From sequence record NC_048792.1: a stretch of 64,000 nucleotides of DNA. One strand, 5' to 3'. Positions 8,753 through 56,521 of this stretch are shown here, in pieces. The notes beneath the pieces were generated by a model. That model was given only the letters and a program-made list of their open reading frames with translations. It did not search any database and was not told where the DNA came from. Positions within the stretch are counted from its first letter, which is position 1. Every line of letters starts with the position of its first letter. Both the position numbers and the translations under genes were made by a program.

Positions 8753-8883
8753 TCATTTTTTACGTCGTGTCTTATAGTGTGCTAAAAGCACACAAGACAT
8801 CTCGCAAGAGGGGTCACGGCGGAGCCTGTGACTATTAGGGGTTAGAATGACTGAGGAATGTAATGACGAAAGGAATTCCCTAA
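8753..8883 (+). repeat. GA-hairpin element, copy 1
   Basis: TCATTTTTTACGT, then GGTCACGGC-GGA-GCCTGTGACTATTA, then GAAT-GA-CT-GA-G-GA-AT-GTA-AT-GA-C-GA-A-AG-GA-ATTC inside a TAGGG/CCCTA stem. Confidence 0.85.
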
Positions 8884-48384: not shown

Positions 48385-48942
48385 ATGGAAACTCGTATGG
48401 TCTTTAGTAATCTTCGTCGTACTGCGGGTAAGTTGTTCCGCAATGTAGGCTTTCGTGAGGAGGGTGCGCAAACTAACCTCAACTCACTGAATACGGCTCA
48501 GTACGAAGTAGTGACTTTCTTGAATCAGTCACTTAATGGTGGCGTTAACAATATTATCAAAAGTATTGCCAGTGAGTCCACTGTAGAGGAAATGGCGCAT
48601 TTATTCCGTCATGCCCATACGTTGGGTTTCCTCAAGTGTGACGTCGCCGTCCTGACCTGTAAGCGAGGTTTTCAGAAGGGGTCGTTCTACGTCTACCTTC
48701 ATGAAGAAAGCCTGAGTAAGAAAGTTTACCTGGAATGGGTAATTCACCAGGTAGGGCTGATGTGGGGAGTTAACCTTCCGATTAAGGTTGTAACCGATTG
48801 TCAGTACGTTAGTGACACTCGAGTTAACCCTAATGAACTAAACGATCTTGATCACTTGAGTTTGTACTTTCAACTCATCTCGTTCGGGGTAGATGTTTAT
48901 CCTGGTAATGCGGGTAAAGAATCGGCATTTCTGATTAAGTAA
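48385..48942 (+). CDS. Hypothetical protein
   Basis: 185 aa, GAGGA RBS. Confidence 0.65.
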   Translation: METRMVFSNLRRTAGKLFRNVGFREEGAQTNLNSLNTAQYEVVTFLNQSLNGGVNNIIKSIASESTVEEMAHLFRHAHTLGFLKCDVAVLTCKRGFQKGSFYVYLHEESLSKKVYLEWVIHQVGLMWGVNLPIKVVTDCQYVSDTRVNPNELNDLDHLSLYFQLISFGVDVYPGNAGKESAFLIK

Positions 48943-48953
48943 TTAGTTAGCTC

Positions 48954-49074
48954 TCATTTTTTACGTACGTTTCAATTATGTGTCAGAACTTGGTCACGGC
49001 CCGGAGGGTCTGTGACTATTAGGGGTTTTAGAGTGAACTAGGATGACCAAAGGGAAGACGAAGTGAGCTCCCTA
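48954..49074 (+). repeat. GA-hairpin element, copy 2
   Basis: TCATTTTTTACGT, then GGTCACGGCCC-GGA-GGGTCTGTGACTATTA, then GAGT-GA-AC-TA-G-GA-T-GA-CC-AAA-GG-GA-A-GA-C-GA-A-GT-GA-GCTC inside TAGGG/CCCTA. Confidence 0.8.
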
Positions 49075-49109
49075 AACGCGTGGATAATTAACCCCATTTA
49101 AACTAAATT

Positions 49110-49149
49110 GATACTCACTGGTAGAATAAGTTCTACCAGTGAGTATTGA
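49110..49149. terminator. Perfect 16-bp inverted repeat
   Basis: atactcactggtagaa-taag-ttctaccagtgagtat. Confidence 0.65.
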
Positions 49150-49194
49150 TCTATTTTGTAAAATTACCAATATACCTCCATTGGATCTTAGGTA

Positions 49195-52570: not shown

Positions 52571-52634
52571 ACCCGTCATAGGCCCGTAGGATTAACCTAC
52601 GGGCTACTATAATCTTTTTTAGAAGGAAAATAAA

Positions 52635-53235: not shown

Positions 53236-53362
53236 TCATTTTTTACGTCACTTCTCTTTAGTTTGTCAAAACAATACCACTCAGGTCACGGCCGTAGGCC
53301 TGTGACTAATAAGTACCCGTATGACTGAAGAACGTAGTGATGAAAGGAATACATCTTGGGTA
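53236..53362 (+). repeat. GA-hairpin element, copy 3
   Basis: TCATTTTTTACGT, then GGTCACGGCC-GTA-GGCCTGTGACTAATA, then GTAT-GA-CT-GA-A-GA-AC-GTA-GT-GA-T-GA-A-AG-GA-ATAC inside TACCC/GGGTA. Confidence 0.85.
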
Positions 53363-56350: not shown

Positions 56351-56435
56351 GGTAGGTTACTCAAGCGGCAACGAGAACAGACTGTAAATCTGTCGCCTTC
56401 GGGCTTCGATGGTTCGAGTCCATCACCTACCACCA
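56351..56435 (+). tRNA. trnY: tRNA-Tyr (GTA)
   Basis: Acceptor GGTAGGT/ACCTACC, anticodon arm ACAGA-CTGTAAA-TCTGT, long variable arm, GTTCGAGTC T-loop, and encoded CCA. Confidence 0.95.
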
Positions 56436-56443
56436 AATCAATG

Positions 56444-56521
56444 AACCGAGTAGCTCAACTGAATAGAGCACCGTCCCGCTAAGACGGCCGTTGGAGGTTC
56501 AAATCCTTCCTCAGGTTCCCA
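56444..56521 (+). tRNA. Atypical tRNA, anticodon GCT (nominally Ser) on a short-variable-arm body
   Basis: D arm GCTC/GAGC, anticodon arm CCGTC-CCGCTAA-GACGG, T arm GGAGG-TTCAAAT-CCTTC, and CCA. It has C33 and a bulged A in the acceptor stem. Confidence 0.7.

What the first reader, a model, noticed from the sequence alone, without database searches (positions are those of the whole stretch)
8753..8883. Three-copy element with GNA triloops and tandem G.A mismatches: a probable structured ssDNA signal (copies at 8753, 48954, 53236)
Seen: three intergenic sites 4-40 kb apart share the same layout. Each has TCATTTTTTACGT, then 38-59 nt later hairpin 1, GTCAC-GGC(n)-GNA-(n)GCC-T-GTGAC-TA(T/A)TA, whose loop is always C-GNA-G (GGA, GGA, GTA) while stem length varies by whole base pairs. 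Hairpin 2 has short Watson-Crick blocks separated by three or four GA/GA tandem mismatches and a 3-nt loop. The paired positions co-vary: GAAT/ATTC, GAGT/GCTC, GTAT/ATAC; G-C, T-A, A-T; AT-GTA-AT, CC-AAA-GG, AC-GTA-GT. The GA dinucleotides stay nearly invariant. Known: C-GNA-G triloops and tandem sheared G.A pairs are exceptionally stable in DNA, as in d(GCGAAGC) and N4 virion-RNAP hairpin promoters, whereas RNA favours GNRA/UUCG tetraloops, which this phage uses in its terminators. The fold can form only on the + strand. Inference: this is a dispersed, strand-specific ssDNA or cruciform signal coupled to a promoter-like motif. Possible roles are transcription-activated replication or priming origins, recombination or packaging sites, nuclear-shell tethering sites, or a non-autonomous mobile unit. 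I know of no description in chimalliviruses.
Basis: partly seen in the sequence, partly recalled or inferred. Interest (0 to 1): 0.88.

Follow-up and report, generated by a model that had tools for sequence, protein, structure and literature searches.

The report
Conserved structured RNA in jumbo phage
The three copies of a two-hairpin element in Serratia jumbo phage Moabite are real and evolve like a folded single strand, but their setting (sense strand, behind a phage promoter-like motif, one copy ending in a terminator) suggests an undescribed small structured RNA rather than a single-stranded DNA signal.

Summary
The window is bases 1-64000 of Serratia phage Moabite. There are exactly three copies in the 273,933-bp genome, at 8753, 48954 and 53236. 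All lie on the + strand, and their stems are maintained by compensatory changes.

An outer stem encloses hairpin 2. Orthologues in phage Totoro carry further compensatory changes. A shorter homologue lies in the syntenic gap of Klebsiella jumbo phages: it keeps hairpin 1 (bulged U, GNA triloop), the UAUUAG linker and a short covarying hairpin 2, but has no G.A ladder.

The ssDNA reading is not favoured. The element always lies on the sense strand. It follows a two-part motif (T6AC, then ATG 12-17 nt on) that resembles phiKZ middle promoters. Copy 2 ends in an intrinsic terminator. Close relatives switch between Watson-Crick and G.U pairs. RNA energy parameters recover the G.A ladder as the minimum-energy fold, and DNA parameters do not.

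No Rfam family matches. The best reading is a new phage structured RNA: 5' leader in copies 1 and 3, a roughly 175-nt sRNA in copy 2, probably a protein- or polymerase-recognition module. Its function is unknown and no transcript data were available.

The parts
8753..8765 (+). Copy 1: T-tract motif TCATTTTTTACGT, the upstream half of a putative phage middle-type promoter
   Evidence: Exact in all 3 copies. TTTTTTAC is 11-fold enriched in intergenic DNA. ATG lies 12-17 nt downstream at 9 of 18 such sites, p=6e-6. In copy 1 the homologous position reads AGT. The promoter role is inferred by analogy to the phiKZ middle motif (PMC8244752, PMC7598289).
8777..8793 (+). Copy 1 only: 5' hairpin GTGTGCT-AAA-AGCACAC, at or near the predicted 5' end of the transcript
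   Evidence: Read directly. Identical in Totoro, whereas the would-be lower stem upstream of it is not kept.
8812..8833 (+). Copy 1, hairpin 1: GGTCAC-GGC-GGA-GCC-T-GTGACT, with a bulged U and a GNA triloop
   Evidence: 22 of 22 bases identical in Totoro. The lower stem covaries against the Klebsiella phages: GUCAC/GUGAC versus CGCAC/GUGCG.
8835..8883 (+). Copy 1, hairpin 2: outer stem TTAGG (8835-8839) with CCTAA (8879-8883), enclosing the G.A ladder at 8845-8878
   Evidence: It is the RNA minimum-energy structure. Totoro has three compensated pairs.
48954..48966 (+). Copy 2: T-tract motif. TTATG at 48976-48980 is the predicted start element, with the start near G48980
48992..49017 (+). Copy 2, hairpin 1, with a 5-bp upper stem that contains a G.U pair
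   Evidence: 26 of 26 bases identical in Totoro.
49019..49075 (+). Copy 2, hairpin 2: outer stem TTAGG/CCTAA around a longer G.A ladder (49031-49070) with one extra GA/GA module
   Evidence: It is the RNA minimum-energy structure. One pair is U.G in Moabite and U-A in Yaphecito, and another is A-U in Moabite and G.U in Kodama.
49107..49158 (+). Intrinsic terminator after copy 2, which would end a transcript of about 175 nt
   Evidence: Annotated in the record. Found by the scan: 20-bp stem with tail CTATTTTG. The stem is kept in relatives through G.U-compatible changes.
53236..53248 (+). Copy 3: T-tract motif
53284..53307 (+). Copy 3, hairpin 1, with a 4-bp upper stem and a GUA loop
53314..53362 (+). 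Copy 3, hairpin 2: outer stem TACCC/GGGTA, compensatory to copies 1 and 2, around the G.A ladder at 53319-53352
   Evidence: It is the RNA minimum-energy structure. Hairpin 1 through the outer stem is 79 of 79 bases identical in Totoro, while the next 52 nt match at 35 of 55 aligned columns.

Best explanation
The element is a transcribed, strand-specific structured RNA module: hairpin 1, a UAUUAG linker, then hairpin 2.

Inferred: it is made from a chimallivirus middle-type promoter (T6AC, then 11-16 nt, then ATG) that lies 8-16 nt after the stop codon of the preceding gene. It would then sit near the 5' end of the transcript. In copies 1 and 3 it would be the leader of genes 014-015 and 069 onward. 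In copy 2 it would be a stand-alone sRNA of about 175 nt that ends at the terminator at 49107-49158.

Shown: the fold is maintained by selection. Hairpin 1 is held constant in sequence: lower stem, bulged U, and a GNA triloop closed by C-G. The G.A dinucleotides of hairpin 2 are invariant, while the Watson-Crick rungs between them covary.

Inferred mechanism: hairpin 1 and the G.A ladder form a recognition surface for a phage or host protein, or for the transcribing phage RNA polymerase. Binding there would set the fate of the RNA that carries it: stability, read-through of downstream terminators, translation or localisation. The ladder is a Moabitevirus-specific extension of the tip of an older, shorter hairpin 2.
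For: Fold and selection:
- 94.6% of cells pair, and 7 pairs change on both sides.
- The helix table shows compensation in every helix of hairpin 2.
- Chance probabilities for the substitution patterns are 2.6e-5 and 7e-6.
- Hairpin 1 is 100% identical between Moabite and Totoro in all three copies. Copy 3 is 79 of 79 identical, while the flanking tails are 49-66% identical.

Deeper homology:
- The syntenic gap upstream of the gp015 homologue in Klebsiella phages FBKp24, Centimanus, KpLz-2_45 and LPKP23 holds hairpin 1, the linker, a short covarying hairpin 2 and a third covarying hairpin. All are on the sense strand.

RNA rather than DNA:
- Every copy in every phage is co-oriented with the flanking genes.
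- The two-part promoter-like motif is enriched: TTTTTTAC 11-fold in intergenic DNA, with ATG at +12 to +17 in 9 of 18 sites, p=6e-6. It matches the published phiKZ middle motif, a TAC core about 22 nt upstream of the start (PMC8244752, PMC7598289). FBKp24 and Centimanus keep it.
- There is no sigma-70 match at the T-tract motif.
- Copy 2 is closed by a + strand terminator.
- Close relatives switch between Watson-Crick and G.U pairs: U.G to U-A in Yaphecito, A-U to G.U in Kodama, and G.U in hairpin 1 of copy 2.
- RNA parameters give the ladder as the minimum-energy fold in 4 of 5 sequences. DNA parameters never do.

Precedent:
- phiKZ makes 17 candidate short structured RNAs from 5' UTRs, and these are conserved within its genus (PMC10914365).
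Against: - No transcript data were available for any of these phages. The start site is inferred by analogy only.
- Copies 1 and 3 have AGT where the motif has ATG.
- The Siatvirus homologue (KpLz-2_45) lacks the T-tract.
- Nearly all neighbouring genes are on the + strand, so co-orientation of three copies is weak evidence by itself.
- GNA triloops closed by C-G are a hallmark of unusually stable DNA mini-hairpins. Hairpin 1 of the Klebsiella phages contains exactly GCGAAGC.
- DNA nearest-neighbour parameters probably undervalue sheared G.A tandems, so the energy comparison is biased towards RNA.
- Three substitutions do not fit the fold: GxG in Totoro copy 2, C to A at the base of the ladder in ParM-25 copy 2, and GxA in the Totoro copy 1 outer stem.
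- No binding partner is identified. The flanking proteins match no family.
Confidence: 0.6

Rival explanations
1. Single-stranded DNA or cruciform signal. The + strand DNA folds when unwound and serves as a priming, origin, packaging, recombination or hairpin-promoter site.
For: The fold is strand-specific. All hairpin 1 loops are C-GNA-G, and the Klebsiella-phage version is exactly GCGAAGC, the classic stable DNA mini-hairpin (own knowledge). Sheared G.A tandems are also stable in DNA (own knowledge). Jumbo phage AR9 non-virion polymerase can use single-stranded promoters (PMC7598289).
Against: With DNA parameters the ladder scores -0.4 to +5.0 kcal/mol and is never the minimum-energy fold. 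G.T wobbles appear and disappear among close relatives. The promoter-like motif and terminator bracket fit a transcript. The cumulative GC-skew curve shows no local turning point at the copies. The annotated polymerase genes are multisubunit and no N4-type enzyme is annotated. The ladder is absent in the Klebsiella-phage homologues.
Confidence: 0.1
2. Intercistronic RNA processing or stability element. The T-tract is not a promoter. The element is read as part of long early polycistronic transcripts and is cut or protected there, like the RNase III hairpins between T7 early genes.
For: Each copy starts 8-16 nt after a stop codon, inside a run of co-oriented genes. Early TATATTAC promoters lie well upstream, at 2154 and 49195, with no terminator before copies 1 and 3 except the one at 52582. 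Copies 1 and 3 lack the ATG of the start motif. The Siatvirus homologue lacks the T-tract.
Against: The 13-nt T-tract motif is identical in three otherwise diverged paralogues and is kept in FBKp24 and Centimanus. The two-part motif is statistically enriched. G.A internal loops every 1-3 bp are unlike known RNase III substrates (own knowledge).
Confidence: 0.15
3. Trans-acting sRNA or decoy. The scaffold of hairpins 1 and 2 carries variable single-stranded parts that base-pair with targets, or it titrates a host RNA-binding protein.
For: Copy 2 has sRNA architecture: promoter-like motif, structured body, AU-rich stretch and intrinsic terminator. The leaders and tails differ between copies.
Against: The variable parts give only chance-level antisense matches within the phage genome. 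Host targets could not be searched. GGA motifs of the CsrA-sponge type are not conserved between copies. Copies 1 and 3 have no terminator.
Confidence: 0.1
4. The region is not a folded nucleic acid. It is a short protein-coding gene inside hairpin 2, a duplex-DNA operator (the hairpin 1 inverted repeat), or a non-autonomous mobile unit.
For: ATG-initiated frames in copies 1 and 3 give similar peptides, MTEECNDERN and MTEERSDERN (read). An HTH protein gene lies next to copy 2. Different extra genes are inserted just upstream of copy 2 in different phages.
Against: The frame stops after 4 codons in Totoro copy 1 and after 7 codons in copy 2. The differences between copies are paired changes, not synonymous ones. 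The spacing between the hairpin 1 half-sites is 10, 14 and 12 nt while complementarity is preserved, which rules out a fixed dimer operator. No terminal repeats or target duplications were seen when reading the copies and their flanks.
Confidence: 0.03

Closest known systems
5'-UTR-derived short structured RNA candidates of phiKZ (ONT-cappable-seq and Grad-seq; PMC10914365)
   Same: They occur in a chimallivirus-type jumbo phage. They are short structured transcripts that start at a phage promoter upstream of a gene, some are ended by a terminator before the gene, they are conserved within the genus, and their function is unknown.
   Different: No sequence relation was tested or is expected. 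The Moabite element is a three-copy paralogous family with a G.A ladder, and it has no transcript evidence yet.
put RNAs of phage HK022, promoter-proximal two-hairpin RNAs that make RNA polymerase terminator-resistant (own knowledge)
   Same: Both are two adjacent hairpins just downstream of a promoter, present in a few copies per genome at the heads of operons, and acting in cis. Copy 2 is followed directly by a terminator and then a gene.
   Different: There is no sequence similarity and no Rfam match. The polymerase here would be the phage multisubunit enzyme. Antitermination is pure conjecture.
N4 virion-polymerase hairpin promoters and the d(GCGAAGC) DNA mini-hairpin (own knowledge; PMC4496689 was listed but not read)
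   Same: Both have a short G+C stem with a 3-nt GNA loop closed by C-G. The Klebsiella-phage hairpin 1 contains GCGAAGC exactly.
   Different: No N4-type single-subunit polymerase is annotated in the genome. The hairpin lies on the sense strand more than 100 nt from the next gene. It belongs to a larger covarying fold that DNA parameters do not support.
Kink-turn and box C/D (K-loop) motifs
   Same: Both have tandem sheared G.A pairs. Copy 3 even contains GUGAUGA and CUGA.
   Different: There is no 3-nt bulge 5' of a GA. Covariation supports a register in which the rungs between the GA tandems pair, and these would be loop residues in a K-loop. There is no Rfam C/D match over the elements.
RNase III processing hairpins between T7 early genes (own knowledge)
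   Same: Both are conserved intercistronic hairpins with internal loops in phage polycistronic mRNAs.
   Different: The G.A tandems interrupt the helix every 1-3 bp, a separate sequence-invariant hairpin 1 is present, and a promoter-like motif lies directly upstream.

Membership tests
Any Rfam 15 family | Covariance-model score at or above the gathering threshold | tested here: not met
   The gathering scan of the window found only two tRNAs. An E<=10 scan of four loci carrying the Totoro and Yaphecito copies gave no match over the elements.
N4-type single-stranded hairpin promoter | Hairpin with a 5-7 bp stem and a 3-nt loop | tested here: met
   Hairpin 1 has 3-5 bp closing a GNA loop, on top of a 5-bp lower stem.
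N4-type single-stranded hairpin promoter | The phage encodes the cognate single-subunit virion RNA polymerase | tested here: not met
   The whole-genome annotation lists only multisubunit alpha/beta-like virion and non-virion polymerase genes. This rests on annotation. No dedicated homology search was done.
N4-type single-stranded hairpin promoter | The hairpin lies just upstream of the start of an early transcript | tested here: inconclusive
   No start-site data exist. The next genes begin 53-170 nt after the fold ends, about 110-230 nt after hairpin 1. The early promoters of this phage are linear TATATTAC motifs.
Kink-turn / box C/D K-loop | A 3-nt bulge immediately 5' of the tandem G.A on the same strand | tested here: not met
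   The only bulge (a single A) is 3' of a GA. The other tandems are symmetric 2x2 loops.
Kink-turn / box C/D K-loop | C box (RUGAUGA) and D box (CUGA) pairing register | tested here: not met
   The boxes occur exactly only in copy 3. The covarying pairs s and e lie where a K-loop would be unpaired.
Hammerhead ribozyme | CUGANGA and GAAA core flanking stem II in a three-way junction | tested here: not met
   CUGAGGA and CUGAAGA are present, but a GA-N precedes GAAA after the stem, there is no three-way junction, and there is no Rfam match.
phiKZ-type middle promoter | AT-rich element with a TAC core about 22-24 nt upstream of the start, and a TATG-like start element | tested here: inconclusive
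   T6AC with ATG 12-17 nt downstream occurs at 9 of 18 sites, p=6e-6. Copy 2 fits, while copies 1 and 3 have AGT. The published motif is in PMC8244752 and PMC7598289. No start-site data exist for this phage.
Phage 5'-UTR-derived or stand-alone small RNA | A discrete transcript with its own start and a terminator | not testable with these tools
   Copy 2 has a promoter-like motif and an intrinsic terminator. Copies 1 and 3 have no terminator. RNA data are needed.
CsrB/RsmZ-type GGA sponge | Repeated GGA in hairpin loops, conserved between members | tested here: not met
   The hairpin 1 loop is GGA in two copies, but GUA in copy 3 and GAA in the Klebsiella phages. The GGA motifs in hairpin 2 vary.

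The most novel reading that the evidence does not exclude
The module of hairpins 1 and 2 is a cis-acting RNA signal read by the machinery specific to these jumbo phages. One possibility is a put-like element that makes the phage multisubunit non-virion RNA polymerase read through terminators. Another is a tag that directs transcripts for retention in, or export from, the phage nucleus. In either case the G.A ladder would be a new protein-recognition architecture. The ssDNA reading also remains possible, at about 0.1.
Probability: 0.12. Interest if true: 0.8.

Novelty: new member of a known kind. Interest (0 to 1): 0.45.

Why it matters
Little is known about RNA-level regulation in nucleus-forming jumbo phages. 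phiKZ has many short 5'-UTR RNAs, and none has a known function.

This element comes with unusually clean comparative support:
- three paralogues in one genome;
- orthologues with compensatory changes;
- a shorter homologue in two other genera.

That gives a defined, mutable target (invariant hairpin 1, G.A ladder) for asking what binds it and what it controls. A helix built from three or four stacked sheared G.A tandems separated by one to three base pairs is also an unusual RNA architecture that merits structural study.

If it turned out to be a DNA signal, it would be the first structured ssDNA signal described in this phage group.

Tried and rejected
- Rfam: no family matches at gathering threshold or at E<=10.
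- Hammerhead, kink-turn/box C/D and CsrA-sponge readings of the GA-rich strands fail on register, bulge position and lack of conservation.
- Small ORF inside hairpin 2: Totoro copy 1 stops after 4 codons and copy 2 after 7 codons.
- Duplex-DNA operator for the neighbouring HTH protein: the half-site spacing is 10, 12 or 14 nt while complementarity is preserved.
- Origin of replication: the cumulative GC-skew curve shows no local turning point at the copies.
- Antisense targets of the variable leaders and tails within the phage genome: only chance-level matches of 8-12 nt.
- Paralogy or known domains in the flanking proteins: gp014 and gp069 are unrelated. There are no Pfam or PHROG hits except the HTH domain in gp063. 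gp015 has no PDB or database relatives beyond these phages.
- Wider homologues:
  - IMG/VR pattern scans returned only the isolates 2050HW, FBKp24 and KpYy_2_45, plus chance hits.
  - Two metagenome scans returned nothing.
  - The GTDB genome scan gave 41 hits in unrelated taxa, scoring 14-29 bits against 74-90 for true copies.
  - A protein-anchored search for syntenic loci found only the two isolates.
- Sigma-70 promoters: none at the T-tract motif.

Full report
**Identity of the window.** The window is bases 1-64000 of Serratia phage Moabite (MK994515, 273,933 bp, genus Moabitevirus). Window and genome coordinates coincide. Eight near-identical records (seven other phages) and one relative at about 80% identity (Totoro) are public.

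- All three sites read as described.
- TCATTTTTTACGT is exact at 8753, 48954 and 53236.
- GGTCACGGC-N-CTGTGACTA occurs three times against zero expected.
- I assembled the rest of the genome and searched it with regular expressions and a covariance model. There are exactly three copies, at 74-90 bits, with nothing else at E<=10.
- All three are on the + strand within the first 54 kb.

**Anatomy.**
- Hairpin 1 is GGUCAC / upper stem of 3-5 bp / GNA loop / bulged U / GUGACU.
- A UAUUAG-type linker follows.
An outer stem encloses the ladder: UUAGG/CCUAA in copies 1 and 2, UACCC/GGGUA in copy 3, which is compensatory.
- The ladder runs as follows in copies 1 and 3: a 4-bp stem, GA/GA, a 2-bp stem with a bulged A, GA/GA, a single pair, GA/GA, a 2-bp stem, and a 3-nt loop.
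- Copy 2 has a 3-bp stem in place of the 2-bp one, an A/GA position, and one extra GA/GA module.
- Copy 1 has its own 5' hairpin at 8777-8793.

**Evidence that a folded single strand is under selection.**
- On the model-fitted alignment, 94.6% of cells pair, against 33-45% when partners are slid. Seven pairs change on both sides, against 0-1 in the controls.
- The inner rungs, which the model did not include, also covary: G-C/A-U, then AU/AU, CU/AG and AC/GU.
- Moabite and Totoro copy 1 differ at 7 ladder positions, six of them in three compensated pairs (P=2.6e-5). Copies 1 and 3 differ at six positions, all compensated (P=7e-6).
- The GA dinucleotides do not change.
- Between Moabite and Totoro, hairpin 1 is 100% identical in all copies. 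Copy 3 is 79 of 79 identical from hairpin 1 to the outer stem, while the downstream tails are 49-66% identical.
- Three substitutions do not fit: GxG in Totoro copy 2 (an alternative register exists there), C to A at the ladder base in ParM-25, and GxA in the Totoro copy 1 outer stem.

**A deeper homologue.**
- gp015, the second gene after copy 1, has homologues at about 30% identity in Klebsiella jumbo phages.
- In the syntenic intergenic gap of FBKp24 (Maaswegvirus), Centimanus, KpLz-2_45 (Siatvirus) and LPKP23, on the sense strand, I found a related element.
- FBKp24 and Centimanus have TCATTTTTTAA, then TTATG. All four then have hairpin 1 as CGCAC-GGC-GAA-GCC-U-GUGCG.
- Against Moabite that gives two compensated pairs, with the bulged U and the GNA loop kept. 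The Moabite model scores it at 22 bits, E=2e-4.
- The linker follows, then a short hairpin 2: GGGG/CCCC, GGUGAC-GUA-GUCACC or GACC-GUA-GGUC.
- Next come a conserved AUCCUUAGAG and a third hairpin with five compensated pairs.
- There is no G.A ladder. The core of hairpin 1, linker and hairpin 2 stem is therefore older, and the ladder is a Moabitevirus extension of the hairpin 2 tip.
- No further relatives turned up in IMG/VR, metagenomes or GTDB genomes by pattern or protein-anchored searches.

**RNA or DNA.** The evidence for RNA is contextual.
1. Every copy in every phage is co-oriented with its flanking genes.
2. The T-tract belongs to a two-part motif. TTTTTTAC is 11-fold enriched in intergenic DNA. 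Nine of its 18 genomic sites have ATG 12-17 nt downstream (p=6e-6). Most of these ATGs are not start codons, for example ATGTAA and ATGTAG. This resembles the phiKZ middle promoter, which has a TAC core about 22 nt upstream of the start (PMC8244752) and a TATG start element (PMC7598289). It is distinct from the phage's early TATATTAC promoters and from sigma-70 promoters.
3. Copy 2 is followed by a + strand intrinsic terminator, and then by an early promoter for gene 063. This gives a self-contained unit of about 175 nt. Copies 1 and 3 run into genes 014 and 069 with no terminator.
4. Close relatives switch between Watson-Crick and G.U pairs.
5. With RNA parameters the ladder is the minimum-energy fold in 4 of 5 sequences. 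Hairpin 2 scores -2.4 to -13.2 kcal/mol. With DNA parameters it is never recovered and scores -0.4 to +5.0. DNA parameters probably undervalue sheared G.A.

Three points favour DNA. The loops are C-GNA-G, GCGAAGC occurs exactly in the Klebsiella phages, and no transcript data exist. The cumulative GC-skew curve shows no local turning point at the sites, and no N4-type polymerase is annotated.

**Mechanism.** Shown: a conserved strand-specific fold, with a sequence-invariant hairpin 1 and invariant G.A steps. Inferred: it is RNA, placed at the head of middle-class transcripts, and serves as a recognition module for a protein or for the transcribing polymerase. The outcome (stability, terminator read-through, translation, localisation) cannot be decided here. 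Rivals are an intercistronic processing site, a trans-acting sRNA or decoy, and the ssDNA signal.

**Comparison with known systems.**
- No Rfam family matches.
- The closest known kind is the set of short structured RNAs derived from phiKZ 5' UTRs (PMC10914365).
- HK022 put RNAs are the closest functional analogy, but there is no evidence of membership.
- Kink-turn/box C/D, hammerhead, CsrA-sponge and N4 hairpin-promoter memberships each fail a defining test.

**Verdict.** The finding is real and well supported as a conserved structured element. It is a new family within a known kind, of moderate interest, and needs transcript mapping.

Noticed in passing
window 2154, 17599, 34050, 39239, 49195, 61024; further sites at genome 65137, 106101, 145049, 204688, 217073, 257708: There is a strongly conserved extended motif, ttTCAcGTaTATATTACytaaaTGATAgg, upstream of + strand genes. 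Twelve of its 15 genomic TATATTAC sites are intergenic. It looks like the early (virion polymerase) promoter class of this phage.
   Followed up: partly
window 16204, 25481, 56054; genome 216970, 169229, 171476, 231394(-), 251820(-): The two-part motif T6AC, N11-16, (T)ATG recurs outside the three elements (9 of 18 sites, p=6e-6). One site is about 300 nt upstream of the tRNA pair at 56351-56517. It is a candidate middle-promoter class.
   Followed up: partly
between gene 062 and copy 2 (window 48942-48954); L018 751-1131, L019 694-1200, L177 651-1034: Relatives carry an extra gene exactly here, just upstream of the T-tract. Yaphecito and Haymo have one gene and Kodama and Totoro have a different one. 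Moabite, 2050HW, BUCT660 and ParM-25 have none. This is an insertion hot spot at a transcription-unit boundary.
   Followed up: partly
genome 251820 to about 251620 (-) and 231394 to about 231200 (-), in L016: There are two more candidate small transcription units on the minus strand. Each has the same T-tract/ATG motif, a structured stretch and a terminator-like hairpin. They are antisense to, or lie between, + strand genes.
   Followed up: no
genome 216970-217080 (L016): This unit has the same layout as copy 2: a T-tract motif, a short unit (annotated 30-aa ORF 242), a hairpin terminator, and then an early TATATTAC promoter at 217073.
   Followed up: no
window 49107-49158 and orthologues in L011, L018, L019, L177, L178: The terminator stem after copy 2 differs between phages by changes that keep pairing only on the + strand RNA: C-G to U.G and G-C to G.U. 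This fits a working + strand terminator.
   Followed up: partly
window 56444-56517: The second tRNA (annotated Ser) scores only 41 bits and has mismatches in the acceptor stem. The first (Tyr, 56351-56432) has a long variable arm.
   Followed up: no
L179 2787-2815 and the same stretch in L180-L182: Downstream of the Klebsiella-phage element there is a conserved GGUGAAGUnGUUGACCUUGAC with a tandem TTGAC repeat. It may be another promoter or a protein-binding site.
   Followed up: no
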